Shown here: piece after piece, positions 2,724 to 64,000 of the stretch
Position numbering within the stretch: position 1 is the stretch's first letter
Layout: every line of letters begins with the position of its first letter
Virus record (IMG/VR): IMGVR_UViG_3300029945_000001
Span: 124,001 to 188,000 of that record
Length of the DNA stretch: 64,000 nucleotides
Direction: 5' to 3' (one strand)
Program-made: the position numbers and the translations under genes
The notes under the pieces: model-generated
Database searches by the model: none
The model's input: only the letters and a program-made list of their open reading frames with translations
Told to the model about the DNA's origin: nothing

Positions 2724-2800
2724 GCCCGTATAGCTTTAGCTGGTAGAGCACCGGATTTGTAATCCGGGGGTCGTGGGTTCGAATCCTACTGCGGGCACCA
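2724..2800 (+). tRNA. tRNA-Thr(UGU)
   Basis: Canonical cloverleaf, anticodon arm CCGGA-TTTGTAA-TCCGG, CCA end. Confidence 0.95.
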
Positions 2801-17011: not shown

Positions 17012-17776
17012 ATGTCTAATAATGGACTCGTGAGTGTTTGGGCAGAAATGCCCAATGATAAACAAGAAAGTGACAGTGCTGAAATGAATACATTAGCGAA
17101 TGAAGAAACAACCGATCGCGAAGTTGTCGATAAAGAAGTTATTGTTGAATGGCCTGTTGTTATTGAAGACGATTCTGAAGAAGAACTTGTTGATGAAAAT
17201 GTTGTAACTGAAATTACACATTTAGATGTATCAGATTGTGAAATAATTTATAAATCTCCTTCTGATATATCTAAAACAGTAATAGACCTTCCTGAAGTTT
17301 GGACGAATGGTAGTTCTAAAGAAGATAAATTAATCTTGAGTGAAATTAATCCTATTGAAGAAGATAAATCAGCTGAAGACATTGCTACTGAATTTCCTTT
17401 AAGTGATTTCATATATGAAGATGATGGATTTGGAAAAGCTCAGTCGTCATTAGATGGCCCTTCTCCTTCTATTATCGAAAAGACTGTTACAACCGGACTT
17501 GGTATTTTTGAAGGATCTACTAGAATTAATGGTCTTAATGAAGCACAGACTGTTGCTGTTAGAGAAATTGCAAAGATACATCAGAAGCTATATATTGAAA
17601 TGGCAACTATGTGTAAAGATATGGAATCTATTATTAATACTCTTATTAATATGTCAGAACTTCCAAAAGATATGGTCCCTTGCAATGCGGTTCATTTTAG
17701 ACATCTCATCGAAAAACACCCACTATTCTTTAAGTTTAGAAAGACTGCTAAACTAAAAGGACGTGTTGGTAAATAA
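17012..17776 (+). CDS. Acidic hypothetical protein
   Basis: 254-aa D/E-rich ORF. Confidence 0.7.
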   Translation: MSNNGLVSVWAEMPNDKQESDSAEMNTLANEETTDREVVDKEVIVEWPVVIEDDSEEELVDENVVTEITHLDVSDCEIIYKSPSDISKTVIDLPEVWTNGSSKEDKLILSEINPIEEDKSAEDIATEFPLSDFIYEDDGFGKAQSSLDGPSPSIIEKTVTTGLGIFEGSTRINGLNEAQTVAVREIAKIHQKLYIEMATMCKDMESIINTLINMSELPKDMVPCNAVHFRHLIEKHPLFFKFRKTAKLKGRVGK

Positions 17777-17849
17777 TAATATAGAGAAATGGCAATCTAG
17801 ATTGCTACTCTGTTGTATGCATCCAACAACTTCTTCAAGGAAATTTACG

Positions 17850-18827
17850 ATGGCTATCAATTCAGTTTGGGCCGGCACCGAGTCCTTCGGTACTGCCGTT
17901 AAGTCGATCAGTGCGATCGACGCTACCATCAATATGCTCGGCAACACTTCCTGTGACATGTCTTCGGCTTTCGCCATGGAGTCGCTGAGCTCACAGATCG
18001 ACGTGATGAAGCATGCCTATGGGCAGATCAAGGCCGGCAAGTCAATCGGTGGCATGGAAACTCTTTATCCGAACGTCTTCGGCAGCGTCGCCGGCCTGGA
18101 ATCTGGTGCGTTCAACAAGGCCGCTGCCCTGGAAGGCCTTGGCGAGAAGATCAAGGAGACGGCCTCTCGTTGGTGGCAGGCTGCCAAGGAACATGTGGTC
18201 AAGTACAAGAAGTGGTACATCGGCGCCGCCATTGCCATTGCCACTACCGCCGCTGTCATCGCCGGATTCAAGACCGAAACTGGCCGCAACGTTGCGACCT
18301 GGGTTGGCAAGAAGGCCGTCAAGATCCCCGGCGTCCAGGCCGTCAAGAATTGGCTGGAGTGCATTCGTCGTTCGCGTGCTGAGCTGAATCGTGCTGCCGC
18401 CCTGGCCAAGGACAATCCTGCTGCCGCCAAGACCTGTGCCGAGAACGCCAGCAAGATCATCGCCGGCGAAAAGATGGAACTGACTCAGGTCCATCTGGAT
18501 GCTGCCGCTGCTCAGAAAGAGCTGATCGATTACAAAGCTGCCACCATTGCGGCCGCCAAAGAATCGAACTTCGCCAAGGCCGATATCGCCAAGATCGAAG
18601 CGCTCTGCGACAAGAACATCAATGCCAAGGACCCCGGCGCCAACGCCACCGCCGCTCGTGGTGCTTGGAACATGATCCTGGCTGTTCTGAAGAGCTTCGG
18701 TCATCTGATCGTCTCCGGCTTCGCCAAGGTCAGCGGTGCTGCCAAGTGGTTGTGGAGCCAGCTGTCCAGCAAGGAAGCTCGTGCCGAGACCAAGGGCAAG
18801 ATCGCTGGCGCGGCGGCCAGTGCTTAA
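17850..18827 (+). CDS. Putative abundant internal head protein (paralogue 1)
   Basis: AAGGA RBS at the 17850 start; GTE/AME/GME/GLE/ALE motifs; GC3-rich codons. Confidence 0.75.
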   Translation: MAINSVWAGTESFGTAVKSISAIDATINMLGNTSCDMSSAFAMESLSSQIDVMKHAYGQIKAGKSIGGMETLYPNVFGSVAGLESGAFNKAAALEGLGEKIKETASRWWQAAKEHVVKYKKWYIGAAIAIATTAAVIAGFKTETGRNVATWVGKKAVKIPGVQAVKNWLECIRRSRAELNRAAALAKDNPAAAKTCAENASKIIAGEKMELTQVHLDAAAAQKELIDYKAATIAAAKESNFAKADIAKIEALCDKNINAKDPGANATAARGAWNMILAVLKSFGHLIVSGFAKVSGAAKWLWSQLSSKEARAETKGKIAGAAASA

Positions 18828-23853: not shown

Positions 23854-24357
23854 ATGACTAAGACCGCTGAAGTTACCACCAAGGAAGTCACCATCAAGGA
23901 AGTCACCACCAAACCCCGTTATGTGGAGCTGGCTGAAAAGCTGACTGAGCTCGCCAAGGCTGGTGACAAGAGCACTGTCGTTGCCTGGGGTGCCGCCGCT
24001 CCCATCGTCGAAGCTGTGACCGGGACCGATGCCGGCATGTTCAAGCAGGTCAATGACACCATCGGCGACCTCTCGAATGCCGCTATCACCATGGCCGGCA
24101 CCGGACTTATTCCCAAGATCGAAGAAGCCAAGAAGGACGGTATCGATCCGTCTGAATTGACCTATCGTGCACGCATCGCCATTCCGGGCGGATCTGTTGC
24201 TGCGATCGTTCGTGCCGAATCGACCTCGCGCAATCCTCGCACTGGCGAAACGAAAGCTGTCTATGGCCGGGCAGCCGTCGAAGTCAACTTCGATGCCGCC
24301 ATCGACAAGGACAATGTGGCTTCATTCTCGAATCGTATCGCCACGCTCCTGGGTTAA
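23854..24357 (+). CDS. Probably highly expressed protein with an HU/IHF-like beta-arm (RNPRTGE)
   Basis: GC3-rich codons; SRNPRTGETK arm motif. Confidence 0.65.
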   Translation: MTKTAEVTTKEVTIKEVTTKPRYVELAEKLTELAKAGDKSTVVAWGAAAPIVEAVTGTDAGMFKQVNDTIGDLSNAAITMAGTGLIPKIEEAKKDGIDPSELTYRARIAIPGGSVAAIVRAESTSRNPRTGETKAVYGRAAVEVNFDAAIDKDNVASFSNRIATLLG

Positions 24358-30039: not shown

Positions 30040-32355
30040 TTAAGCCTGGGGATCAGTCTCATCGATTTCAGCATCGGCATTAACTAAGGCCTGACCGACA
30101 CCATCGACACCTGAAGTCAGAACGCCATCGTTGCCAACCAGAGGATTGTTGTTCACCTGGATGGATTCAGACAACATCAGCTTCAGAATGGCATCGAGAC
30201 CCTTAACGCTGATGATCATGCCGATCGGGTTCGTCGGGTAGACGACCTCACGGCTGTTGGCGACAGCGCGCTGAGTCACGGCCATGGCGTTGTTGAACGT
30301 GAACTTGCCGGCGAAGATGCCACGGTCCAGATTCTTGCCAAAGCTGATGACGCTTTCCGGGTCAGCATCGCGAACCGGGACGATGAGCATCAGACCTTCA
30401 AAGTTCTTGTACGACGTGGCGACGCAGTCGATGCGTGAGCCGTTCGGAAGATAGAAGCTGTAGTCTGCCGACGGAGCTTCTTCGACGCGAGTGTCGTTCA
30501 GTTCGTTGAAGTAGGTTTTGATGGCCAGCAGGGTTGCAATGATCGTCGGGGTGGTGACCAGACGATACACAGCCTTTTCGCCAGGGTTCAGCTGGTTCAG
30601 GTACAGCGAGGTCAGCTGCGAGTCGGCGATGATCGCATTCAGACGATTCATAACCAGCGAATGCATGTCCGAGTTACGCTCGGTTTCACGCATAACGACG
30701 GCATTGGAAACGTCCAGAACACCACGCCAGACATTCGGGTTACACAGAGTGCCGGCCAGGAAGTCCTGAGCCACCGAATTGTACCAGTCGATGAGGGGAT
30801 CGGTTTCCTCGTGCTTCAGGCGATTGTAGACGTTGTTCAGGCACTCGCCGATCATGCGAACGGCCTTGGCATCATTGCCCAGCGACATGATATCATTGAG
30901 GATCTTGATGATGTCTTCGGCCGACTTGCCTTCAGTGTCCTTGATGCTGTATTCGGCGGTGTACATGCGAGACACGGGAATATAGAAGGACTGCTCCTTC
31001 TGTGTCACGCGAGCCGAAATATTCGCCTTGCGCATATTTTCTTCGCTGTACTGGGCGAAGGGTTCGAAAGCGAACAGCGAGAAGGACAGCTTGTTGTAAG
31101 CAGTATTCACGGCATCCGCAACGGTCGTGCCGGCGGCAGGGAAAAGCTGGGCGTTCAAGCTACCATAGCCTGTCGAGGCGCCGGTCTTGAGGTTAAGCTT
31201 CATGGTGAAGTTGAGATCGATTTCGGCACCGGCGTCACCAAGAACAGACAACAACGATGACGCAGTGCCCGCAGCGGTAACAGCAGTCGAAGGAATGACA
31301 CGCTGGATACGAGGAGCTGCTTCACGATCGGCCGAGTCGTTCGTGTTGGTGCGCTGCACCAGACGCGAGGCTGCCTGATATTCGGTACGAACAGGGATAT
31401 ATTCCGTGGTCGTGCCGTCGGTGACGGCGATCCAGACTTCGCGAACATAGGCGCCTTCGCCGATGATGTCAGTCCAGTTCAGATTGTCGTAGCCGACGGT
31501 GTTGGAGCTGACGCCGAGCTTGAACATGTTGAACGGCACGCCGACCTTAACCAAGTTCTGGTGAACCAGGACAGGGTTGGTCGAATCGTCGTTTTCCATG
31601 AACAGTTCGACACGTTTGGCGGTGGTGTCGACGAACGAAGGATCGCGCATCAGCCGGATCAGAGGAGTGCGAATGGCGTTCGAATAGCGAATATCGGCGT
31701 TCGGGTTCTGCGAAGCAGCCAGATCGTAAACATCGCCATTGGCGATCTTGGTGACGACGACGGTTTCTTCGGTAGCGATGCGCGGCAGGATACGATCGAT
31801 CAGCGACTTGAAGACGCGCAGCATGGTCAGCGAGATCGACAGACGAACATCGGTGACGACGCTATCGATGCCTTCACCGAACGACTCGCCGGCAGCGATA
31901 TCGTTAGTGACAGCATTGACACCACCATTGCCGAACAGCGAGCCCAGAGCGATGCATTCGGTTCCGGCAACGCCGCCCTTGGCATCAGCAAAGTTGGCAT
32001 TGGTCGAATGCAGATGCCCCATGACACCAAGCGTAGCAGCTTCGATGGCCGCCGCAATGCGAGGATTGGTACGATCCAGACGATTGTTCTGGGTCGAGCC
32101 GCTCATCGATTCGATGGTACCGATGACGAAGTTTTCAACGGCGGCCAGGTCGATGCGCTCTTCAGCGCCACGAATGACGGTCATCGGCTTGTCGAAATAT
32201 TCCAGGCCGGCAGCATTGGTGACCGAAGCAACCAATGAATTCGAACTCAGAAATGATTCTGTCGCCGCAGCCAGAGTGAACGCAGCACCCAGAGACAGAC
32301 CGCTGTTCTGGGCAACACCACGCAGCTGCTGCTTCCATGAATTAAGTTTGCTCAT
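30040..32355 (-). CDS. Major capsid protein (phiKZ gp120-like)
   Basis: ~770 aa, GC3-rich, N-terminal A-X-E cleavage motifs (ATE, GLE, AVE, AGE); helicase-gp119-MCP arrangement as in phiKZ. Confidence 0.82.
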   Translation of the reverse strand: MSKLNSWKQQLRGVAQNSGLSLGAAFTLAAATESFLSSNSLVASVTNAAGLEYFDKPMTVIRGAEERIDLAAVENFVIGTIESMSGSTQNNRLDRTNPRIAAAIEAATLGVMGHLHSTNANFADAKGGVAGTECIALGSLFGNGGVNAVTNDIAAGESFGEGIDSVVTDVRLSISLTMLRVFKSLIDRILPRIATEETVVVTKIANGDVYDLAASQNPNADIRYSNAIRTPLIRLMRDPSFVDTTAKRVELFMENDDSTNPVLVHQNLVKVGVPFNMFKLGVSSNTVGYDNLNWTDIIGEGAYVREVWIAVTDGTTTEYIPVRTEYQAASRLVQRTNTNDSADREAAPRIQRVIPSTAVTAAGTASSLLSVLGDAGAEIDLNFTMKLNLKTGASTGYGSLNAQLFPAAGTTVADAVNTAYNKLSFSLFAFEPFAQYSEENMRKANISARVTQKEQSFYIPVSRMYTAEYSIKDTEGKSAEDIIKILNDIMSLGNDAKAVRMIGECLNNVYNRLKHEETDPLIDWYNSVAQDFLAGTLCNPNVWRGVLDVSNAVVMRETERNSDMHSLVMNRLNAIIADSQLTSLYLNQLNPGEKAVYRLVTTPTIIATLLAIKTYFNELNDTRVEEAPSADYSFYLPNGSRIDCVATSYKNFEGLMLIVPVRDADPESVISFGKNLDRGIFAGKFTFNNAMAVTQRAVANSREVVYPTNPIGMIISVKGLDAILKLMLSESIQVNNNPLVGNDGVLTSGVDGVGQALVNADAEIDETDPQA

Positions 32356-32357
32356 TG

Positions 32358-34052
32358 TCAAAGAACTCCTGAAATACGCGTATTAAGACCAAGCTTGGTC
32401 AAGAGCGTTTTGGTTGCATCAATGGAAGATGTGAATAACCACAGCTTACACCATTCGTCAAGATAGGCTTTAGTTTCTGAAGAATACTGAGGATCATTCT
32501 TAATATCACCATTGAGTTTAGCAACAGCGAGTCTAACAAAATGATCATTTAGAGTCTCTTTGGAATCGATCAGCGGAATGAACAGCTGAGAATTCTCATC
32601 TTCGGAGATTTCATCAGAGACTTCAGATGATGCAGAACCATCGTCTTGATTGTCTATATTATCATCATCACCATTATCTATAGTGTTTGTATCACCAAAG
32701 TTAGCGTCATCAGATGTTCCATCGCCAGATTCATCGGTTCCTTGTGAATTGGTGTCATCATCGCTGATAGTACTATCAGGATTAGCATCACTATTACTAT
32801 TATTATTGGTAGTATCTTCACCAGAAATATCAGAACTTGGGGAAGCATCAGACGAATCATCTTTGTTAGGAACTTTCGTTTCATCGTCTGATCCCTTTGT
32901 GTCTTTATTATCTACTGTATTTTCAGGATCATCTTCTTCTGATATGGGTTTATCTGCTTCGATATTATCATCTTGATTATTTTCAGTGGCATCTGTTTTA
33001 TCTTCATTTTCCTCATCGTCTTCTTCATCATCTTTAACATCGCCTAGAGCTTCTAATCCATAAAAATATCCAGTATCGTGTCCACTACCGGATACGAAAC
33101 CATTTGGTGATTTTTTATAATAATAATCATCAACATAAATAAGAACTCTATCAATACTATCATAATTTTCAATTCCTTCTAAAGCATCACGTATTCTTTC
33201 CCAATAACGAGTGGCGTCTTTAACATCATAAATGTAATAACCAGTATTGTCGGCACCAACATTTTCAAAATTGCTAACATGTATGGCAAATGCTTTATTC
33301 TTAGTATATTTCAAACAAAGATTTGCACAGACAAAATTCTTATATGAAATAATACCATTATTAATAGCATTAATAGGAAGAGCAGTCAATGCAATAACTT
33401 TAGCAATTTCTAAAAAGCTAGGTTTCATCGTAAGAAACTTAAGACTATTTATCATCTTCCAGTAATTATCCGAATTCTTATTAAATTTGCTATTACAAAT
33501 CAATTCATCTGTATCAATGACAACATGATGGATAGGATCTAATTGTAATGGGAATAGATCGCTTTTCAAATTGACTCTAGGGACATAAAAAATAGTTTTT
33601 GTATTGGTAGTTTCAAAATTAATAGCTGAGAAGATAGCTAGAATACCATTTAATTTAGATAATCCGTGTTTCAGATATAATCCTTTTAATAAAGGAATAT
33701 CACTATCAATAATATTGTTTGTATGAATATACTTATTTACATATTGACCAATCTGGCTATCTTTAACTGATTGAGACATAGTAATGATATTATCTTTAAC
33801 CAATGATAATAAAGCAAGAACATGAGAATGAGTATTAGATTCAACAAATATATTAAAATATTTATACATAATAATTTGTTCTAAAAGAAGCTTATCATTA
33901 TCAAGATCGACATTTCTAATGTCTATATTTATTTTAAGATCTAAATTAATAGCAGTATCATCAAAAATAACTTTATCAAGTACTGAAATATTTCTGAAAA
34001 TATCATTTAAAACAATAAGTGGCTGTCTGTCCATGGGAGCATTGTCCTTCAC
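32358..34052 (-). CDS. Virion head-associated protein with an acidic low-complexity region (phiKZ gp119-like position)
   Basis: Between helicase and capsid genes; GLE motif before the D/E/N-rich tract. Confidence 0.6.
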   Translation of the reverse strand: MKDNAPMDRQPLIVLNDIFRNISVLDKVIFDDTAINLDLKINIDIRNVDLDNDKLLLEQIIMYKYFNIFVESNTHSHVLALLSLVKDNIITMSQSVKDSQIGQYVNKYIHTNNIIDSDIPLLKGLYLKHGLSKLNGILAIFSAINFETTNTKTIFYVPRVNLKSDLFPLQLDPIHHVVIDTDELICNSKFNKNSDNYWKMINSLKFLTMKPSFLEIAKVIALTALPINAINNGIISYKNFVCANLCLKYTKNKAFAIHVSNFENVGADNTGYYIYDVKDATRYWERIRDALEGIENYDSIDRVLIYVDDYYYKKSPNGFVSGSGHDTGYFYGLEALGDVKDDEEDDEENEDKTDATENNQDDNIEADKPISEEDDPENTVDNKDTKGSDDETKVPNKDDSSDASPSSDISGEDTTNNNSNSDANPDSTISDDDTNSQGTDESGDGTSDDANFGDTNTIDNGDDDNIDNQDDGSASSEVSDEISEDENSQLFIPLIDSKETLNDHFVRLAVAKLNGDIKNDPQYSSETKAYLDEWCKLWLFTSSIDATKTLLTKLGLNTRISGVL

Positions 34053-38166: not shown

Positions 38167-39462
38167 ATGCACTTTGATATTTCCACGCTGACTGCTGACG
38201 CTTTGACTTCTGCTACCATGATTGGTACTCTTGTTTCGGAGTCCGCAGCCCCCCTCATCGACTGGGACAGCATGCGCAAGGAGATCGAATCCTGGCCGCT
38301 GGTCTCGGAGGTGCCGCAGGACAAGGACGTTCCGCAGCTGAACATGACTTCGATCACCGGCAAGACCTGCCGTGAGCTGGTCAAGGGCGGCATCAAGACC
38401 GAGAATTTCATCGCCATCATCAAGTCGATGCTGAATGTCCGCGCCCATGTCATGTCCTCGAACGCCGGCAAGGCCCAGACTCTTTATCCGACCGTGAACG
38501 AATATGGCGCCCGTGAAGTCGGCAATGTCATCGTCGTCGCCAACAAGCATGCCGGCAAGCCCCGGTCGATCAACATCAATCGCCAGGCTTATGACCATCC
38601 GAAGAATGCCAATGACGAGACCCGTGGTCGTCAGCGGCACGTCAGCTGCGTCGTCGAAGTCGGTGGCTATATCGGTTTCGCTTTCTACAACAAGTTCTCT
38701 CCGAACACCCTGATCCAGACTTTCTTCCAGGTCACGCATGTCATTCCGCTCGGCGGCGACAGCAAGCTGTTCGAAATCGGCATGACCCTGGTTCATGCGG
38801 CGTTCGCTTCGGCCGCCGACGGCAAGGTCCTGGCCACTCCTCTGGAAGATGATACTCCGCTGGCCAATCTGATCGATGCGATGCAGCGTCGTTTGGCCGT
38901 CGGTGCTCTTCAACTGGATTGGCCGCTGTACAGTCAGATCTTCGTTCCGCATTTCGGCCTGAAGAATGACACCGCCGCCGGCATCGCCAAGATCGATCAT
39001 TGGAAGGATCTGCACTCCGACACCGTGACTGCCAATCTCGACAAGCCGGTCAGTGCCGACATCACCGACATTGAAATCGATCTGATGCACAATCTGGTCG
39101 AAGCGCGTGCCACCTCCACGCCGAAGACCGACGGCGATGGCAATGCCGTCTATGATGAAACTGCTCTGGTCATCAGCCATCACATGGACGACACCGGCAA
39201 TACCATCCGTGCGATGATGACCCTGATCAACAACAACGAAACCATCTGGACCGGCGTCACCGACATCACGGCCAACAACTTCGATCGTCCGGTCGGTGAT
39301 GACATCACCTATCCGAGCGGCAAGTTGAAGGCGGCGGTTCTCGATCCGGCCCTGATTCTCGGCGCCACCACGTTCCAGCGTCTGAAGACCGACGTCATCA
39401 ATCGTCAGGTCGAAGGAAAGCATCCTGTGGAGAACCCGACCATCCTGGGCATTCTGCGTTAA
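38167..39462 (+). CDS. Probably highly expressed early protein of unknown function
   Basis: 431 aa, GC3-rich, own promoter and terminator. Confidence 0.85.
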   Translation: MHFDISTLTADALTSATMIGTLVSESAAPLIDWDSMRKEIESWPLVSEVPQDKDVPQLNMTSITGKTCRELVKGGIKTENFIAIIKSMLNVRAHVMSSNAGKAQTLYPTVNEYGAREVGNVIVVANKHAGKPRSININRQAYDHPKNANDETRGRQRHVSCVVEVGGYIGFAFYNKFSPNTLIQTFFQVTHVIPLGGDSKLFEIGMTLVHAAFASAADGKVLATPLEDDTPLANLIDAMQRRLAVGALQLDWPLYSQIFVPHFGLKNDTAAGIAKIDHWKDLHSDTVTANLDKPVSADITDIEIDLMHNLVEARATSTPKTDGDGNAVYDETALVISHHMDDTGNTIRAMMTLINNNETIWTGVTDITANNFDRPVGDDITYPSGKLKAAVLDPALILGATTFQRLKTDVINRQVEGKHPVENPTILGILR

Positions 39463-46682: not shown

Positions 46683-47408
46683 CTACTGCGTCGGGCCAAG
46701 GATCGTGCCCTTAGCTATCCAAGTCACATTTGAAATGCCGGTGATCGCATAACCGGGCGGGCCACCGTTCCCGCCGCCGTTGTATGATCCGACAGACCCG
46801 TTTTGGCCGTACGCACCGGGGGCTCCCCCAGCACCACTGGAACCAGCACCAGAGGTGCCGCCGCCCTGAGCGCCGCCACCTACCGACAGGGTTCCTGAAT
46901 TGCCGGCGCCGTTATATCCGTTTGACGGACTCCATCCGGGAACTGCCCCTGCGCCGCCGCCACCGTTGCCGCCCCAGCCATAAGTCGTGTATTCACATCC
47001 GCCACCGCCACCACCACCACCGCCACTCTGGATCGTGCCTAAATTTGTGATTGTGATTTTCTGCAAGGTGGAAATGGCAGGGCCACCGCTGCCACCGCTA
47101 CCGCCACCGCCATCACCACCACCGCCACCGCCGCCCTGGCCGCCGGCACCTACAATATAAGCACCAACCATTACATTAAGAGAAATATTAGAACTAGCAG
47201 GAAAACTATTGATAGTTAGTGCATACGTACTTGTTGATATCGATCCGATAATTGCAGATGAAGCAATATTTAATTTGACATTAATAGGATTTTTACCATT
47301 CCAACCATAATTAGTAGTAAGATCAGTATTTAATACGTAATTATAAATAGTTCCAGATAAATTTATTACTACTGATTGTACAGAGCTGGCAGGATTGAGT
47401 ATAAACAT
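46683..47408 (-). CDS. Glycine-rich tail/receptor-binding protein (gp38-adhesin-like), mosaic
   Basis: Poly-G runs, GG.A, I.N.GTI..GGGGG; codon usage changes near 47150. Confidence 0.7.
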   Translation of the reverse strand: MFILNPASSVQSVVINLSGTIYNYVLNTDLTTNYGWNGKNPINVKLNIASSAIIGSISTSTYALTINSFPASSNISLNVMVGAYIVGAGGQGGGGGGGDGGGGSGGSGGPAISTLQKITITNLGTIQSGGGGGGGGGCEYTTYGWGGNGGGGAGAVPGWSPSNGYNGAGNSGTLSVGGGAQGGGTSGAGSSGAGGAPGAYGQNGSVGSYNGGGNGGPPGYAITGISNVTWIAKGTILGPTQ

Positions 47409-56792: not shown

Positions 56793-57956
56793 ATCTTGAT
56801 CTTTCATCAATGTAAATATATTGAATGTTAATTCATGTTCTATCAATTTTCGTGTATTCTCTATTTTACAATTTGACCAGAACTTATTACCTATGAGAAT
56901 AGGGATATCTCTATTCATAGCCTTCATTAAATTCTGGCTATGTACAGTATCCCGTTGTAGAAAATATGTATACATAATGATCTCTAAGTATCTATAGTCT
57001 CTTAAGAATTCCATCCAATTATATTGTCTTAAGTTTTTAATATAACAATATTTTAAAATATGTTTTATATAAGATACAAAATCTCTATCTCCTAGTCTTA
57101 AACTATTAAGAAACATATCGCTTCTTAATGATTTCTCTTTTACTAATTTTATATTTGTAACCATTTCTTCTATAAATAAATTATATTCACTTCCTCTAAA
57201 TCCAAAGAATTGATCTTTTGCAACTTCTTTTGTATAATCATAATTATCATTGAAATAAGCATCTCTTAGTAATGACTGGTACTGATTTATCAACCAGTTA
57301 TTCATGAGATCATCTAACATAAAACATAATACATATCTGTGAATATAATTAGAAACATTGTCATCTGTTTTCTGTAGATTAAAGGTCTTTAAATAATTAA
57401 CAAACTGTAGACCTAAAGCAACAACATCAATACCAATAACAATATGAGAAGGACATTGTTCTTTGAATATTATCTTATCTAGATAAGTATTAAAAGTTAA
57501 CTCATTACTCTTTATATCCATTATACGAACGGGACGAATATGTTTCCACATATCCCATCCTTGTTCAAATGGTAATGTTTGTAAAGGATCTGTACTTTCG
57601 ATTGGAATAATGTATTCATTACATCTACCTTTGTCAGAACTCACAAAACTATTTATTCTAATAGTATTTGTTTCATTCATATCAAATATACTTTCTAATT
57701 GATCTTTGTCATTTAACATAACATCAAAGTATCTAGAAACATCAGTTTTTCTTTTAAGTACCATATTCTCTACATCCATATCTAACAAGATTTTCTTTAT
57801 AAGTTTAATAGCACCACTTTCAAAACTATTAGAATATAAAAACCTTTTATAAATAAGATTCTTTCTTACATTTAAACTATTTATATACATATTTGTTTTT
57901 GGAAATACTTTTCCATTTAAATGTGGTAAATATGTTTGCATAGATCGAAATAACAT
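56787..57956 (-). CDS. Conserved jumbo-phage protein divergent from the chimallin gene
   Basis: 389 aa; W..IRPVR..I.IDV..L..Q motifs; position as phiKZ gp52. Confidence 0.55.
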   Translation of the reverse strand: MLFRSMQTYLPHLNGKVFPKTNMYINSLNVRKNLIYKRFLYSNSFESGAIKLIKKILLDMDVENMVLKRKTDVSRYFDVMLNDKDQLESIFDMNETNTIRINSFVSSDKGRCNEYIIPIESTDPLQTLPFEQGWDMWKHIRPVRIMDIKSNELTFNTYLDKIIFKEQCPSHIVIGIDVVALGLQFVNYLKTFNLQKTDDNVSNYIHRYVLCFMLDDLMNNWLINQYQSLLRDAYFNDNYDYTKEVAKDQFFGFRGSEYNLFIEEMVTNIKLVKEKSLRSDMFLNSLRLGDRDFVSYIKHILKYCYIKNLRQYNWMEFLRDYRYLEIIMYTYFLQRDTVHSQNLMKAMNRDIPILIGNKFWSNCKIENTRKLIEHELTFNIFTLMKDQDV

Positions 57957-58188
57957 AAACCATTTCCTCTCTAAAAGAGTTAATCATATAATAGATTTTT
58001 AAATGATACTTTTATTGTAAAAAAATAAATGTGAATATAATATTGTGTAGAGACTTCGCCGAGAAATCGGTGATTTCTTAGAGGGATATATATGTCGCAT
58101 TTTTCAAACGAAATGTGAACATATATTATTTATTTGGTTATAACCATGTTCCTTGTCGACGAGGAACACAAGTAAAAGGGACTAAAAA

Positions 58189-59775
58189 ATGTCTAGTGTT
58201 TCCGGTTTTGGTACTCAGGAAAGCGATTCTCCCAAGGCTCCGCAGGGCGAAAAGCAGGCTCCTGGTTTCAGCAATTCTCAGCAGGAAAAGAAGCGTTCTC
58301 TCCTGCACAGTTCATTGTCCGAATTTGACAGCTTCTCGACGCAGTCCCCGCAGCTATCGAAGTTCGTCGAGCGTATGGAAAAGGAAATCCCCGGCGCCAA
58401 GGTCGTTCGCATCCCTGAGCCGTCCAACACTCTGGCGGTGATGGTCGACAACATGTTCTATGTTCTGCTGTTCCCCGACATGGGCGTTCAGTTCGGAACT
58501 CTTGAATTCAAGCGCAAGGCGTTCATCGCTTATTTCCCGAGCGTTCGCAAGCGCCTCGAAGCTGATTTCGCGAATTGCACCATCATTCAGAATGCCATCG
58601 TCATTCCCGAAGACTACCAGAACGAAACTCGCGTCGGCGCCATCATCGCCCATCTGCGGTCTACGTTCTCGGCGAACAAGCCTGGCAATCTGGATGTCTA
58701 CGGGTCGATCAGCTTCTTCAAGGGTTCGACCTTGACGATCTCGACGTCGTTGGCTGAAGTCCACAACTACTACGATCGCCATTGGCCGTTCGTGACCAAG
58801 CCGCGTTTCGACTACGGCATCGTTGTCAGCTCTCCTGTTCGTGACGAACTGTCGGTCTCCAACAACGAACCGACGGAACCGAAACAGCTGTTCGTCGTCG
58901 GCGGCTACACCAGCTTCGTTCGGACCAATCCTCCGAACAACTCATTGGCTCGCGAAAAGCTTCCGCATGTTCTGGCTCCGATCGTGCACATTTCTTCTGT
59001 GTTCTCGATCATGCCGATCAATGCCTTCGCTCCTCTCGCCATCGGCCTGGGTGGGTCGAAGTTCCTCTATGATGGTCTGTGGCTGTCGCCTTATACTTCA
59101 TTCGAAAGCGGAAAGCCGAACCTCGGCCGCCTGATGCCGGATGTTCTGGACAACAGCCGCAATGAACTGATGTCGTGCGACAACATGGACGACGTTAAGC
59201 AGTTCGTCCAGATCGCCTGCTTGACTCCTGTTCTGGCTATCGATAACATCCCTGGCGTTCCGACGCTGTCCATGCTCAAGCTGTTCATGGACGATGGCAA
59301 CAACAAGCGGGTCATCGATGCCTTCAGTGACTTTATGGGCAAGCCGTATGATGGCAATAGCGACATCTTTTCGGTCGCTTCGACGGTCATCACCGGCATC
59401 GTCAACTACCCTGACAGCCCGACCGATAGTCGCGTCGTCGACTATATGTCACTGGTCAGCGGTAAGGGATATCCTGCTGAGGAAATCTCGAACCTGCTGG
59501 ACGTCTATGAGAACCAGCATTACCAGGCTTCGATTGTCGCCAAGCATTCGAAGTTCATTCCGCTGTCGTACAACATTGTCAGCATCCTGAAGCCGTCTTT
59601 TGTGCAGGCCCTGGTCAATGCTATCAACAACGGCGTGACCATCAAGCAGTCCAACAGCAATACCAGCAGCAGTAACACCAACTGGCTGATCGATATGGCC
59701 AAGGGCTATAGCGAGGCTCGTCTGAGCATGGGTGCCAATACTGTCGAAGGTGGTCTCGGCGGCATGTACCTGTAA
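58189..59775 (+). CDS. chmA: Chimallin (phage nucleus shell protein) candidate
   Basis: GC3-rich; immediately upstream of the nvRNAP beta'-N gene as in phiKZ gp54-gp55; P.V.IS, W..P..NLG.L, AID..G and DSR.VDY motifs; flexible termini. Confidence 0.72.
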   Translation: MSSVSGFGTQESDSPKAPQGEKQAPGFSNSQQEKKRSLLHSSLSEFDSFSTQSPQLSKFVERMEKEIPGAKVVRIPEPSNTLAVMVDNMFYVLLFPDMGVQFGTLEFKRKAFIAYFPSVRKRLEADFANCTIIQNAIVIPEDYQNETRVGAIIAHLRSTFSANKPGNLDVYGSISFFKGSTLTISTSLAEVHNYYDRHWPFVTKPRFDYGIVVSSPVRDELSVSNNEPTEPKQLFVVGGYTSFVRTNPPNNSLAREKLPHVLAPIVHISSVFSIMPINAFAPLAIGLGGSKFLYDGLWLSPYTSFESGKPNLGRLMPDVLDNSRNELMSCDNMDDVKQFVQIACLTPVLAIDNIPGVPTLSMLKLFMDDGNNKRVIDAFSDFMGKPYDGNSDIFSVASTVITGIVNYPDSPTDSRVVDYMSLVSGKGYPAEEISNLLDVYENQHYQASIVAKHSKFIPLSYNIVSILKPSFVQALVNAINNGVTIKQSNSNTSSSNTNWLIDMAKGYSEARLSMGANTVEGGLGGMYL

Positions 59776-59792
59776 GTTCGTTTCTGGAATGT

Positions 59793-59838
59793 ATGGTAGG
59801 GGTCGAAAGATCCCTACCATCATTTCTTTTATTTTTCT
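59793..59838 (+). terminator. Terminator after chmA
   Basis: ATGGTAGGGGTC-GAAA-GATCCCTACCAT plus T tract. Confidence 0.8.
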
Positions 59839-59924
59839 TAATTGAGGTTAATTATAAATTATGATATTATCTTTAGATAATATACATATATATTACATTT
59901 TTGCATACATACAGAGGGGATCAA

Positions 59925-61768
59925 ATGCATATTAACAAACTCAATCCTGATGCTATTTTAAATTTAGAATCTACATCTACGTCTACTAAAGAGATCGTTA
60001 GACATGTTGGTTTTTGTAACTTAGAAGAATTATATGCTGGATCAAAAGAAGCTATTTGTTTAAATGAAATTCCTTTAGGAAATAAAGATTATGCACAACA
60101 GCGTAATCGTATGTTATTCTCAAGAAGTGGTGATTTGAGTTTTATTGCATCTTGTGAATGTGGGCATTATTTTGGTAATTATTATAAAGGACAAATTTGT
60201 AATATTTGTCACAGTGAAGTTATTGACGATTTCGCTGCTTATAACAAAATTCAACATAAAACTTGGTTATCTATTCCACATGGTATCAAAGTACTTCATC
60301 CTATGTTTTATAAGCTTCTTACAAATTCTTGGTTAAAGAGTGGGTACCTAGAAGCAATTTTAAACCCTAATGCACAATTACCTCCTGAATTAGAAATGCA
60401 TATTGATGGACAAGGTTATGTTTATTTCTATGAAAATTTTGATAAGATCATAGATTACTTTGCACGTATCAATAGTGTTACAAGTAAGAAACCAATTACG
60501 AAAGATATTTTAGAAGTTATTGCAAAGAATAGAGATTTGGTCTTTACAAATAAGCTTCCTATTTTGTCTAGTGTTGTTCATTCTGTTACAAACGATGGAA
60601 CACATGGTGGTCGTCAATTTGTTGATTCTGGATCTAAACTTATCCTTAATGCTGCTACTGATTTACAATGTATTTCAGATAGAGAAACAGTTCGAGTAAA
60701 AACATTATTGAAAACTATTTATGATGTTTATTCATCTTATATCAGTTATATCGATGAAATCATTAGTGATCGTATTGGTGCAAAAAGATCTATTTTCAGA
60801 GGTCAGATTTTAGGGACTAGAACACACTTTTCTTTTAGAGGTGTTATTTGTCCACATGAAGATAAATATGATCATTTGTACTTGCCATGGTCTATGGGTG
60901 TTAATACTTATAAAGATCACATTATTGGTAGATTAATTGATGATTACAAAATGGCTCCTGGAGATGCTGTTCTTAGACAACGTATCGCCTTGGTTGAATT
61001 TGATAAAGATATCAATGATATATTTATTAAACTTATTAACGATAGTCCATTTGAAGGATTACCAACGACATTTTGTAGACACCCTTGTTTAAAACGTGGC
61101 GGTGTTCAATTCTTGTATATTACTAAATTTAAAACAAACATACATGATAATACTATTAATATTGGTGTTCCTGTTAGTCATGTTACGAAGGACCCGAATG
61201 CAAAGTTAATTGGCCTACTTGAAAGTAATTTCAAGATAGAATTCTCCTTAATTGCGGGAAAACCTCGTTAAGCATCATATACCAAACATCCCTCAGAAAT
61301 GAGATATACAGGATGTGGCCAATCTAATCAATTGGGTATGGTAAAAACTATGATGATAGAGAAAGTCCGCAGCGAAGCTTCTACGGAACATCGGATGATG
61401 TGCTATGAAGAACGTTCAACGATCATGGGTTTATCACCCAGTAGACTCCCAAGTGGGAAAGAAATAGGAGATACCCTACTCCAATTGGACAGGGTAAAGA
61501 TATGATCTGGTCCACATAAAGATATGTGGCGGGTAGAACATACCGGGATATGAGAGAGATAACTTCAACGACATATCTGGACACAACGGACTTTGACGGA
61601 GATGAGATGACTGGTAATCCTATCTTTGAAAATGAAGCTGCTCGTAAGTTCAGTGTTCTGCATCCAGCAAATCGTATTCATAATACAAAATCATTTGGTA
61701 TTGCATCTGGCGTATCTTTGACATATCCTGTTCTGTCTACATTAAGTGCATTCTTGTCTTCTGATTAG
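59925..61768 (+). CDS. Non-virion RNA polymerase beta' N-terminal subunit (phiKZ gp55-like); spliced, exon 1 59925-~61202, exon 2 61589-61768
   Basis: C.CG...C..C zinc finger; R....G.R.HFSFR.VI; R.P.L; NA|DFDGD reconstituted across the intron. Confidence 0.9.
61203..61588 (+). ncRNA. Group I intron without a homing endonuclease
   Basis: P AATTGCGGGAA (61250), Q GTCCGCAGC (61365), R CGTTCAACGATCAT (61413), S AAGATATGATCT (61497), P7 GATCAT/ATGATC, terminal omega-G at 61588. Confidence 0.9.
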
Positions 61769-61780
61769 GAGTATAACCAT

Positions 61781-62392
61781 ATGTCATTTACTATGACACA
61801 GTTAGGTGCATTTCCTCTTGCTGGTAATCTTTTAGGTGGTGGCGGAAACGATGCCATTGTTAACAAGATCAATAACTCATTTCAAAGTAATAACTTCTTT
61901 GGAAATATTCAAGACGATTTTACAAGTATTCGTAAATCCTTTGTTGATACAGTCATTCGTGATATTCGTATGTCTGAAGTTAAGTTCAATGAGGCCATGA
62001 CTACTATCGATGTACAAGAAAATAATATCAAACCGTTAGAAACATTAGATGATCTTAGAGATACACCTTCTATTATGTTCCATCCTATTATTACATATGC
62101 GCCAGTATTGAATCTATTAAAACAAGGAAGAATTAGTGGATTTGGATTTGATCCAGAACATATTGATGAAGAAGATGTTTATGGAAGATTAATTAATAAT
62201 GGTAGAGTTGATGATGTTATGGAAGCCATGGATGAAAATGGAATTGTTACATTTAAAAATGTTTGGTATAGTGACGATCCTGTATTAACAAGAAGTGAAT
62301 TAGATGCCATTGAACGAACTCGTGATTTTGTTGATACTGTTATTAGAGTAATGAAGTTAGATCCTACAAATCCAGATTGTGATTTAGGATAA
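61781..62392 (+). CDS. Conserved jumbo-phage hypothetical protein
   Basis: AGGAG RBS; C-terminal DPT motif; lies in the core block after the nvRNAP gene. Confidence 0.7.
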   Translation: MSFTMTQLGAFPLAGNLLGGGGNDAIVNKINNSFQSNNFFGNIQDDFTSIRKSFVDTVIRDIRMSEVKFNEAMTTIDVQENNIKPLETLDDLRDTPSIMFHPIITYAPVLNLLKQGRISGFGFDPEHIDEEDVYGRLINNGRVDDVMEAMDENGIVTFKNVWYSDDPVLTRSELDAIERTRDFVDTVIRVMKLDPTNPDCDLG

Positions 62393-62452
62393 AATTTTAT
62401 GATGGGGATGGGTGAAAATCCATCCTCATTATAAACTACAAGGATGTAGAAA

Positions 62453-62845
62453 ATGGCAACAATTGTCATTCCAACATTAGGACCAACTGGTTTATTAAAA
62501 ACCGGTACCGATAAAGTAACATATATGTTGAATTATTTTTTTAGTATGAAGGCGGGTATTTCTGACTTATTTCCAGATCTATTAATTAGTAATCATGACT
62601 TATTAACTCGATATGAAAATACTCCTGATCAGTATGTAGCAAATACTAAAAAACAACTAATGAATGTTATGGCAAGATTATTTGGAGAAAATAACTATAC
62701 AGTTGAAGTTACTTATAATGCATCAAGTAAAGTTGGATTTTATGATATTACTATTGAAATAATGTGGATCGAAGATGGACAATGGAATAGTTTAACTTCT
62801 AATGTTAATATAACCAATAATCAAATAACCATGTCATTCACATAA
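62453..62845 (+). CDS. Conserved jumbo-phage hypothetical protein
   Basis: IPTLG..G N-terminus; RBS. Confidence 0.7.
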   Translation: MATIVIPTLGPTGLLKTGTDKVTYMLNYFFSMKAGISDLFPDLLISNHDLLTRYENTPDQYVANTKKQLMNVMARLFGENNYTVEVTYNASSKVGFYDITIEIMWIEDGQWNSLTSNVNITNNQITMSFT

Positions 62846-62857
62846 GGGAGAACTAAA

Positions 62858-63469
62858 ATGTCATTTGATTTTACAAGAGATTTATTAGCGAAACTCGGTG
62901 GACATAGTGCTGTAGATGAAATTAATAGTTTTTGTAAGACTGCTTTAAAAACCCTTGATGATATTTCAAAAAAGAATAATACTTTTACATTAATGCAGTT
63001 TAAAAAGTTTATGCCTATTTTTTATTCTAACAATAGTAATAGAGAAGATGAAAAATATAAAAAATTAGTGGAAGAATTTATGGATCGTAAAATAGATTTC
63101 TTTGAAATGATTTATGTTGTTGATAACAATGATCCCAATCTTGTTCTTTTCAGATTACCAAGATTATTTAGACGCCCTAAAGATACTGCCGAAAGAAGTA
63201 GAAATGATAGAATTGGTTTAAATGCATATGTTAATAAAACATCAAGTCAGATTCCTAGAGACTCAAGTGCCGCTTGGGGTGTTTTATATAGAGTTTTAGA
63301 TAAAAAATTTAATGTAGATGGTATAGAGATTGAAGAAGCACAGAAAGAATTTATGGACTGTATTAAGTCTATTAGAGATTTTATTCAGAATGGTCCTCCT
63401 AAAGAGATAGAAGAAACAAAAATCAATGAACAAGATAGCACAGAATGGGAAGTCCCAGACGACAACTGA
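62858..63469 (+). CDS. Conserved jumbo-phage hypothetical protein
   Basis: VVD....VLF.LP.L motif; RBS. Confidence 0.7.
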   Translation: MSFDFTRDLLAKLGGHSAVDEINSFCKTALKTLDDISKKNNTFTLMQFKKFMPIFYSNNSNREDEKYKKLVEEFMDRKIDFFEMIYVVDNNDPNLVLFRLPRLFRRPKDTAERSRNDRIGLNAYVNKTSSQIPRDSSAAWGVLYRVLDKKFNVDGIEIEEAQKEFMDCIKSIRDFIQNGPPKEIEETKINEQDSTEWEVPDDN

Positions 63470-64000
63470 TTTTGGTATTATTAATTTAACTGATGTTCAT
63501 TTAGGACATTATAAAACACCGAGTCAATATATCATTGATAATCTTTATATGTATTTATTTCCATTATTAAAACAAGAAACTACAAAACTTCTTTTGATCA
63601 ATGGTGATTTTCTAGATACACTTTTGTATTTAAATCCTAGTGTAAATATCATTCTTGGTTTTATAGTTGATCTTCTTTATCGGTGTAATAAAGAAAGTAT
63701 TGTTGTTCGTGTTGTGAGGGGTACATATTCTCACGATAGAAATCAAATGTCATTATTTAAATTACTGTATGATAAACACAAGTTTACAAACGATTTAAAA
63801 TACATAGATAAATTAACATATGAAAACATCAATAGTTTAAATAGATCTTTTATCTATATACCTGACGATTTACCATATGAGGATAGTTATGCTATTATAG
63901 AAGAAGTAAAGAATTTGCTATCTATTAATAACGTATCTCATGTTGACTATGTGACAGTTCATGGCAACTTTGCACATGCTCTTCCAGAAAATATATCATT
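63426..64000 (+). CDS. sbcD: SbcD/Mre11-like metallophosphoesterase (partial, runs off the window)
   Basis: Frame from the ATG at 63426 reads TDVHLG, INGDFLD, VRGTYSHD and HG. Confidence 0.85.
   Translation, partial: MNKIAQNGKSQTTTDFGIINLTDVHLGHYKTPSQYIIDNLYMYLFPLLKQETTKLLLINGDFLDTLLYLNPSVNIILGFIVDLLYRCNKESIVVRVVRGTYSHDRNQMSLFKLLYDKHKFTNDLKYIDKLTYENINSLNRSFIYIPDDLPYEDSYAIIEEVKNLLSINNVSHVDYVTVHGNFAHALPENIS

What the first reader, a model, noticed from the sequence alone, without database searches (positions are those of the whole stretch)
61191..61600. ORF-less group I intron splits the RNAP catalytic motif and has an atypical 5' splice site
Seen: a complete group I core with omega-G at 61588, and (C)AAAGTT able to pair with exon 2 GACTTT(G) as P10. 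Restoring NADFDGD needs cleavage after A61202, opposite a G of the GGC guide, rather than at the usual U-G wobble. Cleavage after U61199 is also in frame but gives PN-DFDGD, one residue short. Known: phiKZ-like RNAP genes carry group I introns, often with homing endonucleases. Inference: either a non-canonical splice site or a variant active-site loop; all nvRNAP activity depends on this splicing.
Basis: partly seen in the sequence, partly recalled or inferred. Interest (0 to 1): 0.65.

Follow-up and report, generated by a model that had tools for sequence, protein, structure and literature searches.

The report
Active group I intron, non-U splice site
A small self-splicing RNA sits inside the catalytic motif of a giant peat phage's RNA polymerase gene, is demonstrably active in nature, and most likely cuts its upstream exon after an A instead of the near-universal U, which would make it a natural exception to a textbook ribozyme rule.

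Summary
Window 61203-61588 is an ORF-less, 386-nt group I intron (RF00028, 59.6 bits, E 1.6e-14). It splits the N-A|D-F-D-G-D motif of a phiKZ-gp55-like RNA polymerase beta' gene in an AT-rich jumbo phage from peat.

- **Not a sequencing error:** A61202 is identical in three other assemblies and in an RNA-library contig.
- **Intron is active:** two peat metatranscriptomes hold circle junctions joining G61588 to 61205 and to 61208. This fixes omega-G and shows the ribozyme works in nature. One of these cuts is not after a U.
- **Ligated exons not seen:** no ligated-exon read or record was found, so the 5' splice site is inferred, not observed.
- **Why A61202:** all 17 intron-less homologues keep N-x-DFDGD spacing. 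The sister intron at the same site (L013) ends its exon in GCU. G61212 lies at the same distance from P2 as the wobble G of relative L015. U61199 cannot pair with the guide.
- **New here:** the J5/4 nucleotide next to P4, equivalent to Tetrahymena A207, which contacts the wobble G, is A in 9 of 9 related cores but G61365 here.

Verdict: a new variant of a known kind. Confidence in splicing after A61202 is about 0.65.

The parts
59901..61202 (+). Exon 1 of the RNA polymerase beta' N-terminal-half gene (phiKZ gp55 / PhiPA3 gp054 type). The TTG at 59901 or the ATG at 59925 is the start. It ends ...GAC CCG AAT GCA (D-P-N-A).
   Evidence: tblastn hits 147 jumbo-phage records at about 25% identity. 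PHROG 2987, 'RNA polymerase beta subunit', scores E 1.5e-60. Metagenomic relatives are 42% identical. The gene lies between the chimallin-position ORF and a gp59-like ORF, as in isolates.
61200..61214 (+). P1 hairpin. Pairs are G61200-C61214, C61201-G61213, A61202 opposite G61212 (the reactive position), A61203-U61211 and A61204-U61210. The loop is 61205-61209. The inferred 5' splice site is 61202|61203.
   Evidence: Read from the sequence. The same architecture and the same G-N5-P2 spacing occur in L015. The sister intron L013 has GCU opposite GGC. The hairpin is not stable on its own by nearest-neighbour energy, 0 kcal/mol.
61203..61588 (+). ORF-less group I intron, 386 nt, subgroup IA-like (it has P7.1 and P7.2).
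   Evidence: RF00028 at 59.6 bits, E 1.6e-14 and E 5e-16. It is 83% identical to the L013 intron over aligned positions. Contigs of it occur in all 4 peat metatranscriptomes laid.
61203..61207 (+). P10 5' strand, AAGUU. It pairs with the first five bases of exon 2 (61589-61593, GACUU).
   Evidence: Read from the sequence. Analogous P10 pairings exist in L013 (AAGAUU with GAUUUU) and L015 (AAA with UUU).
61205..61208 (+). Two circularisation sites. Omega-G 61588 is joined to G61205 (cut after A61204) in run X19 and to A61208 (cut after U61207) in run X20.
   Evidence: tables 5, 7 and 8. The X19 contig joins 61380-61588 directly to 61205-61290. The X20 contig covers 61258-61588 and is followed by AATTGGCC, which equals 61208-61215.
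61218..61235 (+). P2, a 7-bp stem (61218-61224 with 61229-61235) capped by a GUAA tetraloop.
   Evidence: Read from the sequence and the Rfam alignment. It aligns with P2 of L015 and L013.
61243..61248 (+). P3 5' strand, UCUCCU. It pairs with 61466-61471, AGGAGA.
61253..61258 (+). P4 5' strand, UGCGGG. It pairs with 61366-61371, UCCGCA.
61259..61365 (+). J4/5 (61259-61263), P5 with a branched extension (61264-61361) and J5/4 (61362-61365, AAAG). G61365 replaces the conserved A next to P4.
   Evidence: In the Rfam alignment the consensus 'uAA' lies opposite 'AAG'. Nine of 9 related cores have A there. The sub-region folds at -31.8 kcal/mol. The role of Tetrahymena A207, Azoarcus A87 and Twort A83 is described in PMC1891724 and PMC9943679.
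61372..61420 (+). P6 with P6a and P6b, followed by J6/7.
61421..61425 (+). P7 5' strand, GAUCA. It pairs with 61503-61507, UGAUC. P7 is the helix that holds the guanosine-binding site in group I introns.
   Evidence: The guanosine-site role is established knowledge, not tested here.
61426..61461 (+). P7.1 (61426-61440) and P7.2 (61446-61461), the peripheral hairpins typical of subgroup IA.
   Evidence: Fold. P7.1 is identical in L013.
61474..61494 (+). P8.
61512..61577 (+). P9 (61512-61529), P9.1 (61532-61544) and P9.2 (61547-61577).
61588..61588 (+). Omega-G, the last nucleotide of the intron. The 3' splice site is 61588|61589.
   Evidence: It is the joining nucleotide of the circle junctions in two independent RNA runs. 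Relatives end ...ACAAUCG...ACAAGCG and ...CAUAACG just before exon 2.
61589..61768 (+). Exon 2, reading DFDGDEMTG... through to the stop codon (59 aa).
   Evidence: It aligns with intron-less homologues.

Best explanation
Window 61203-61588 is a resident, ORF-less group I intron of the IA type. It interrupts the Mg-binding N-A-D-F-D-G-D motif of the gp55-type RNA polymerase beta' subunit of an uncultured chimallivirus-like jumbo phage from peat.

Shown:
- The ribozyme core is present.
- Its 3' end is G61588.
- It carries out transesterifications in nature: its omega-G is found ligated to 61205 and to 61208, forming 5'-truncated circles.
- The base at 61202 is A.

Inferred mechanism:
1. P1 forms between 61200-61204 and 61210-61214, placing A61202 opposite guide G61212, where other group I introns have a U.G wobble.
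2. Exogenous guanosine cleaves 61202|61203.
3. P10 (61203-61207 with 61589-61593) aligns exon 2.
4. The 3'-OH of A61202 attacks 61588|61589, giving ...AAU GCA|GAC UUU..., that is PNADFDGD.
5. The released intron shifts register and circularises two and five nucleotides in, much as the Azoarcus intron does.

The conserved J5/4 adenosine that reads the wobble G is a G here (G61365). I read this as a change coupled to the A at -1. That coupling is inference.
For: - **Core:** RF00028 at 59.6 bits, E 1.6e-14 and 5e-16.
- **Base call:** three other assemblies are identical, including A61202. An RNA-run contig covering 61104-61287 shows no difference.
- **Activity and 3' end:** circle junctions 61588>61205 (X19) and 61588>61208 (X20) come from different runs and studies. 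The 61207|61208 cut fits G61205-C61214, U61206.G61213 and U61207.G61212, so G61212 is the reactive guide G. The other cut follows A61204, or G61205 under the 1-nt ambiguity. Either way this ribozyme reacts at a non-U site.
- **Protein spacing:** 8 isolate orthologues have PN[A/C]DFDGD. Five intron-less metagenomic homologues have NADFDGD. Four more have N[A/N/I]DFDGD. Only A61202 plus G61588 reproduces this spacing.
- **Sister intron:** L013 sits at the same NA|D site, ends its exon in GCU opposite GGC and is 83% identical over aligned positions.
- **Matching geometry:** L015 has the same P1 layout and the same G-N5-P2 spacing.
- **Alternative excluded:** U61199 has no pairing partner in the guide (sequence).
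- **Receptor change:** the J5/4 base next to P4 is A in 9 of 9 related cores and G here. Its contact with the wobble G is documented in PMC1891724 and PMC9943679.
- **Precedents:** Azoarcus forms L-3 and L-5 circles after a 2-nt register shift (PMC13168695). Group B IStrons splice after G (PMC4227781).
Against: - No ligated-exon read, contig or protein was found. The 5' splice site is therefore not observed.
- P1 with A opposite G has no predicted stability (0 kcal/mol). The guide pairs better with an upstream decoy, AGG(A)CC at 61189-61194, at -3.3 kcal/mol.
- A G:U pair with U on the exon strand is described as a strict requirement for 5' cleavage (PMC6155759).
- All 9 related beta' introns inspected have U at -1. 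The A could therefore be a recent, mildly harmful synonymous change rather than an adapted state.
- The circles could also arise without exon ligation, by 3' hydrolysis followed by circularisation.
- An unspliced exon 1-intron contig exists. It could be pre-mRNA, or DNA in the RNA library.
Confidence: 0.65

Rival explanations
1. The intron splices after U61199. The polymerase then carries PN-DFDGD, an active-site loop one residue short.
For: U is the canonical -1 base. The product is in frame.
Against: U61199 and the bases before it cannot pair with G61212 or G61213 and their 3' neighbours (sequence). All 17 intron-less homologues keep one residue between N and DFDGD. The sister intron L013 splices between the Ala and Asp codons.
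Confidence: 0.07
2. The A at -1 and the G in J5/4 are damage, not adaptation. Exon ligation would then be slow or rare, and most transcripts would end as circles, hydrolysis products or mis-spliced RNA (for example through the decoy pairing at 61189-61194, which is out of frame). The phage would survive on a trickle of correct mRNA.
For: The isolated P1 has no predicted stability and the decoy pairing is better. U at -1 is otherwise universal among the relatives. Only intron, circle and unspliced contigs were recovered, with no ligated junction.
Against: The same sequence occurs in at least 17 peat DNA runs and in RNA libraries from 2023-2025. This is a successful phage whose gp55-type subunit is expected to be essential. 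The failure to see exon 2 at all in four small RNA contig sets says little. The productive site would still be A61202.
Confidence: 0.18
3. A61202 is a sequencing or assembly error for T, and the site is canonical.
For: GCT would also encode Ala and would give U.G, as in L013.
Against: Four assemblies, counting the window's own, have A. An RNA-run contig also has A. At least 9 DNA runs hold all sampled 31-mers.
Confidence: 0.01

Closest known systems
Intron of metagenomic contig L013 (JGI 3300060645; intron L013:3770-4257) in the orthologous beta' gene
   Same: The insertion point is the same, between the Ala and Asp codons of NADFDGD. Sequence identity is 83% over aligned positions. P7.1 is identical, and the P3/P4 sequences, the P5 extension motif and the 3' end (...GGACAAUCG) are shared. 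It is also ORF-less.
   Different: L013's exon ends in GCU, giving a canonical U.G. It keeps AA in J5/4. It carries about 77-100 extra nucleotides at its 5' end, including a second UUGGC guide-like copy.
Introns at NAD|FDGD in relatives L014, L015 and L016
   Same: The intron family is the same (74-78% identity for L014 and L015). In L015 the P1 layout and the G-N5-P2 spacing also match.
   Different: They are inserted 3 nt downstream, after GAU. Their guides differ: L015 has GUCC, and L014 may pair AUUUGC with GCAGAU. L014 and L016 carry ORFs, with faint HNH and NUMOD1 matches in L016's neighbouring ORF.
Azoarcus pre-tRNA-Ile group I intron (PMC13168695)
   Same: It is a small ORF-less bacterial-type intron. 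After splicing it forms two 5'-truncated circles a few nucleotides in (L-3 and L-5) after a register shift of P1. Here the circles would be L-3 and L-6 if the intron starts at 61203.
   Different: Azoarcus cuts after U2 and U4 and has a U.G at the splice site. It belongs to subgroup IC3 (from my own knowledge) and lacks P7.1 and P7.2.
Group B IStrons such as BcISt1 (PMC4227781)
   Same: They are natural group I ribozymes whose 5' splice site follows a non-U base (G). This was confirmed experimentally for BcISt1.
   Different: They still contain a U.G pair, shifted by one base from the splice site. They are fused to an IS element. Here no U.G is present in P1 at all.
Endonuclease-bearing introns in phiKZ and PhiPA3 RNA polymerase genes (PMC11620839, PMC10914365)
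   Same: They are group I introns in multisubunit RNA polymerase genes of nucleus-forming jumbo phages.
   Different: Those carry HNH endonucleases. For phiKZ, splicing was not detected in long-read transcriptomes. This intron is ORF-less and its activity is visible in environmental RNA.

Membership tests
Group I intron (Rfam RF00028) | Conserved catalytic core P3-P9 scored by the covariance model above the gathering threshold | tested here: met
   59.6 bits against a threshold of 50, E 1.6e-14 and E 5e-16.
Group I intron (Rfam RF00028) | A terminal guanosine (omega-G) that acts as nucleophile or leaving group at the 3' splice site | tested here: met
   G61588 is the nucleotide joined to 61205 and to 61208 in circle junctions from two RNA runs.
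Group I intron (Rfam RF00028) | A U.G wobble pair in P1 at the 5' splice site | tested here: not met
   The only in-frame register that fits the guide puts A61202 opposite G61212. The A is confirmed in 4 assemblies and in RNA.
Group I intron (Rfam RF00028) | P10 pairing between the guide region and the start of the 3' exon | tested here: met
   61203-61207 pair with 61589-61593, 5 bp including one G.U.
Group I intron (Rfam RF00028) | An A-rich J4/5-J5/4 loop with a conserved A next to P4 (Tetrahymena A207) that docks the wobble pair | tested here: not met
   J5/4 reads AAAG, so G61365 takes the place of the conserved A. A is present in 9 of 9 related cores.
Group I intron (Rfam RF00028) | Guanosine-initiated self-splicing that yields ligated exons | not testable with these tools
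   Circles show catalysis, but no ligated-exon record was found.
Subgroup IA group I introns (typical of phages) | Extra hairpins P7.1 and P7.2 between P7 and the 3' strand of P3 | tested here: met
   There is a 37-nt insertion at that place in the Rfam alignment. It folds into two hairpins, 61426-61440 and 61446-61461.
Mobile intron with homing endonuclease | An endonuclease ORF inside the intron | tested here: not met
   The intron is 386 nt. Its only ORFs are 68 and 53 aa and have no Pfam match.
phiKZ gp55-type (non-virion) RNA polymerase beta' N-terminal subunit | Sequence homology to gp55 / PhiPA3 gp054 and a DFDGD metal-binding motif | tested here: met
   tblastn to PhiPA3 gp054 and 146 other records. 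PHROG 2987 at E 1.5e-60. DFDGD is present at the start of exon 2.
phiKZ gp55-type (non-virion) RNA polymerase beta' N-terminal subunit | Conserved neighbourhood: the shell-protein (chimallin) gene upstream and a gp59-like gene downstream | tested here: met
   The order is the same in 8 isolate genomes. The upstream ORF is 24-27% identical to the upstream ORFs of L013-L015. L014's upstream ORF has a faint chimallin Pfam hit. The downstream ORF matches PHROG 3254.

The most novel reading that the evidence does not exclude
This is a natural group I ribozyme that has re-specified its 5' splice-site recognition. An A(-1) opposite the guide G replaces the U.G wobble. The J5/4 'wobble receptor' adenosine (the A207 equivalent) has changed to G as a matched partner. 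If so, the U.G rule is a property of a receptor-substrate pair that can co-vary, rather than of group I chemistry itself.
Probability: 0.3. Interest if true: 0.75.

Novelty: new variant of a known kind. Interest (0 to 1): 0.55.

Why it matters
The U.G wobble at the 5' splice site is one of the most constant features of group I introns. It is also the stated design rule for trans-splicing and circular-RNA ribozymes.

A naturally successful intron in an essential viral gene that works with A at -1 would be a rare natural exception, especially if the wobble receptor changed with it. It would also provide a ready-made pair of positions (61202 and 61365) for a double-mutant cycle.

The case also shows that environmental metatranscriptomes can confirm ribozyme activity, through circle junctions, for uncultured phages. 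Finally, the beta' catalytic motif of jumbo-phage polymerases turns out to be a crowded landing site for introns.

Tried and rejected
- **Whole-window Rfam scans:** both modes miss the intron. Only the 801-nt scan and the genome search find it.
- **blastn to isolate phages:** the locus gave no match.
- **Ligated or intron-less junction:** I searched with a gapped pattern covering splice gaps of 0-12 nt. It found nothing in JGI metagenome contigs or in IMG/VR.
- **Protein word search with exon 2:** it returned only unspliced ORFs. The search with exon 1 returned no spliced form at high identity.
- **Mis-specified pattern:** a second metagenome scan for the P3-P4 core used a pattern that, as I realised afterwards, does not fit the window's own sequence (one G too many). 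It found nothing. The same pattern family in IMG/VR found only unrelated beta-subunit introns.
- **Other splice-site combinations:**
  - G61579 as omega-G would give NDTTDFDGD. The circle junctions at 61588 contradict it.
  - Splice sites after G61200 or C61201 paired with intron ends at A61586 or C61587 also restore N-A-D at the nucleotide level, but the intron would not end in G.
  - Sites after U61206 or U61207 are out of frame.
- **Split gene without splicing:** rejected, because the cut falls inside the metal-binding motif.
- **Deletion origin of the A:** I considered that the A at -1 arose by deletion of an L013-like 5' segment, since L013 has an internal ...GUAAAGUGUUGGCC resembling the window's GCAAAGUUAAUUGGCC. 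This cannot be tested with two sequences.

Full report
**What is there**

The window comes from a 104.6-kb IMG/VR virus record, estimated about 46% complete. The same phage occurs on contigs of up to about 230 kb. Its habitat is peat: 17 runs, all but possibly one DNA (one search lists only 6 RNA runs, at shares of 0.24 or less), hold at least half of the sampled words of the locus, and six metatranscriptomes hold part of it.

The ORF at 59901/59925-61271 is the N-terminal half of a multisubunit RNA polymerase beta' subunit.
- tblastn finds 147 jumbo-phage records at about 25% identity, including PhiPA3 gp054, which its record describes as similar to phiKZ gp055.
- PHROG 2987 matches at E 1.5e-60.
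- In eight isolate genomes the gene lies between the nuclear-shell (chimallin) gene and a gp59-like gene. The window has the same order.

That phiKZ gp55 belongs to the non-virion polymerase is my own knowledge of the literature and was not tested here.

**The intron**

The frame of exon 1 reads ...K-D-P-N-A (AAT GCA at 61197-61202). It then runs into a stop at 61269-61271.

D-F-D-G-D-E-M... begins at G61589 and runs to the stop at 61768.

Between the two lies a group I core. RF00028 scores 59.6 bits against a gathering score of 50, with E 1.6e-14 and E 5e-16 in the genome search. Whole-window scans miss it, presumably through the speed filters, since the 801-nt scan found it.

From the Rfam alignment, sub-region folds and comparison with relatives the helices are:

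| Element | Window coordinates |
|---|---|
| P1 | 61200-61204 / 61210-61214 |
| P2 | 61218-61224 / 61229-61235 (GUAA loop) |
| P3 | 61243-61248 / 61466-61471 |
| P4 | 61253-61258 / 61366-61371 |
| P5 with branched extension | 61264-61361 |
| P6 | 61372-61420 |
| P7 | 61421-61425 / 61503-61507 |
| P7.1 | 61426-61440 |
| P7.2 | 61446-61461 |
| P8 | 61474-61494 |
| P9 | 61512-61529 |
| P9.1 | 61532-61544 |
| P9.2 | 61547-61577 |
| omega-G | 61588 |
| P10 | 61203-61207 / 61589-61593 |

P7.1 and P7.2 place the intron with the IA-type introns common in phages. It is 386 nt long and has no endonuclease ORF.

**The base at 61202**

Three other IMG/VR assemblies, from metagenomes 3300029945, 3300030688 and 3300029953, are identical to the window over 56901-64000. 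An RNA-library contig covering 61104-61287 shows no difference.

**RNA evidence**

I laid four peat metatranscriptomes on 59901-62400.
- All four give intron contigs.
- In run X19 a contig flanked by adapter sequence joins 61380-61588 directly to 61205-61290.
- In run X20 a contig covering 61258-61588 continues with AATTGGCC, which is 61208-61215.

These are junctions of 5'-truncated intron circles, the well-known side reaction in which omega-G attacks near the intron's 5' end.

They establish three things.
- **First:** the intron's 3' terminal nucleotide is G61588, so exon 2 starts at 61589.
- **Second:** the ribozyme is catalytically active in nature.
- **Third:** the guide G can be identified. 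The cut at 61207|61208 fits a P1-like pairing of G61205-U61206-U61207 with G61212-G61213-C61214. G61212 is therefore the guide G that sits at the reactive position.

The other cut follows A61204. Under the one-letter ambiguity of that joint it could instead follow G61205. In either reading this ribozyme reacts at a non-U site.

If the intron begins at 61203, the two circles lose 2 and 5 intron nucleotides. This is close to the L-3 and L-5 circles of the Azoarcus intron, which form after a 2-nt register shift of P1 (PMC13168695).

No contig covers exon 2 or a ligated junction. One contig is colinear across the exon 1-intron boundary. It could be precursor RNA, or DNA in the RNA library.

**Where the 5' splice site is**

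It was not observed, so it is inferred from four lines of evidence.

(a) Frame. With omega-G fixed at 61588, only cleavage after A61202 or after U61199 keeps the reading frame.

(b) Protein spacing. Eight isolate orthologues have PN[A/C]DFDGD. Five intron-less metagenomic homologues at 31-41% identity have NADFDGD. Four more have N[A/N/I]DFDGD. One residue between N and D is invariant in all 17. A61202 reproduces this; U61199 does not.

(c) Homologous introns. Protein search revealed that this gene family is riddled with introns.
- L013 carries the sister intron at the same NA|D point. It is 83% identical over aligned positions, with the same P7.1 and the same P5-extension motif. Its exon ends in GCU opposite a GGC guide.
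- L015, at 78% identity, is inserted 3 nt downstream. It has the same P1 layout: two A-U pairs on the intron side, then the wobble G, then exon pairs. It also has exactly the same spacing from the wobble G to P2, five nucleotides. This identifies G61212 as the homologous guide G.

(d) Pairing. U61199 and its upstream neighbours cannot pair with the guide in any register.

Together these make A61202|A61203 the productive site. I put this at about 0.65-0.7, and at about 0.97 for omega-G.

**How unusual this is**

All nine related beta' introns whose junction I could read have U at -1. These are L013 (GCU), L014-L016 (GAU), and L017-L019, L032 and L036 (GAU).

The literature treats a G:U pair with U on the exon strand as the one strict sequence requirement at the 5' splice site (PMC6155759; PMC4227781). 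The best-documented natural exception is the group B IStrons, which splice after a G next to a shifted U.G.

**A second deviation found here**

J5/4 reads AAAG. G61365 therefore stands where the family consensus and 9 of 9 related cores have A.

That adenosine is equivalent to Tetrahymena A207, Azoarcus A87 and Twort A83. It contacts the amino group of the guide G in the U.G wobble and packs P1 against J4/5 (PMC1891724; PMC9943679).

So the window's intron differs from its sister at both partners of the wobble-receptor contact. I read this as possibly compensatory. It could equally be two hits of decay. The circle junctions argue that docking and catalysis still work.

**Weak points**

- The isolated P1 has no predicted stability.
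- The guide pairs better with an upstream exon segment, AGG(A)CC at 61189-61194. If cleavage happened there the product would be out of frame.
- Circles can form without exon ligation.
- The persistence of an identical sequence across many peat samples and years argues that the gene works, but this is indirect.

**Verdict**

The sequencing-error refuter is excluded.

This is a new variant of a known kind: an ordinary phage IA intron in a known type of location with an extraordinary reactive pair. It awaits one RT-PCR or read pile-up.

Noticed in passing
window 58189-59775, 17763-18827, 23854-24357, 30040-32361 (-), 38167-39462, 46683-47408 (-): Codon usage is bimodal. Most ORFs have GC 0.22-0.35 and GC3 0.13-0.23. 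A discrete set of ORFs has GC 0.52-0.57, with GC3 0.64-0.74 in five of them and 0.42 in 46683-47408. Their boundaries coincide with the ORFs. One is the chimallin-position gene directly upstream of the beta' gene. One has weak tail-fibre PHROG hits. The rest have no PHROG or Pfam match. Relatives L013-L015 are GC-rich in both genes measured (the chimallin-position ORF and beta' exon 1). This is unexplained.
   Followed up: partly
L013-L019, L029, L032, L034-L036, L038 and proteins P0004-P0022: The gp55-type beta' gene is an intron hot spot. Interruptions occur at GRNP|, at NA|D, at NAD|F and at NADFD|G in different uncultured phages. In L032 and L036 the PNADFD codons appear to form a micro-exon of about 20 nt flanked by intervening sequence on both sides.
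   Followed up: partly
L013:3770-3870: The sister intron has about 77-100 extra 5' nucleotides and two guide-like copies. UUGGCA lies next to a 6-bp P10. UUGGCC lies at the position homologous to the window's guide. The internal ...GUAAAGUGUUGGCC resembles the window's exon-intron junction GCAAAGUUAAUUGGCC. This hints that the window's A at -1 could stem from a deletion.
   Followed up: partly
window 61189-61194 versus 61212-61216: An upstream exon segment, AGG(A)CC, is a better complement to the guide GGCCU than the splice-site triplet is (-3.3 kcal/mol against 0). It may be a decoy or a regulatory alternative pairing. Cleavage there would be out of frame.
   Followed up: no
L023 and L025 (IMG/VR 3300028603_000017, 3300014206_000047) and L024: Related IA introns sit in other jumbo-phage genes. 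In L023 and L025 one follows ...AGVGDRLG in what looks like an RNA polymerase beta subunit. L023 and L024 each hold a second group I-like P4/P6 core motif.
   Followed up: no
window 2724-2800, 2806-2881, 1243-1319: The window holds two phage tRNA genes, Thr-TGT and Asn-GTT. A borderline tRNA-like Rfam hit at 1243-1319 (29.2 bits) is not called by ARAGORN.
   Followed up: partly
window, whole: Method note. Rfam scans of the full 64 kb miss the intron in both modes, while an 801-nt scan scores it above the gathering threshold. Further introns in long windows may be missed in the same way. The genome search found only this one in the 104.6-kb record.
   Followed up: yes
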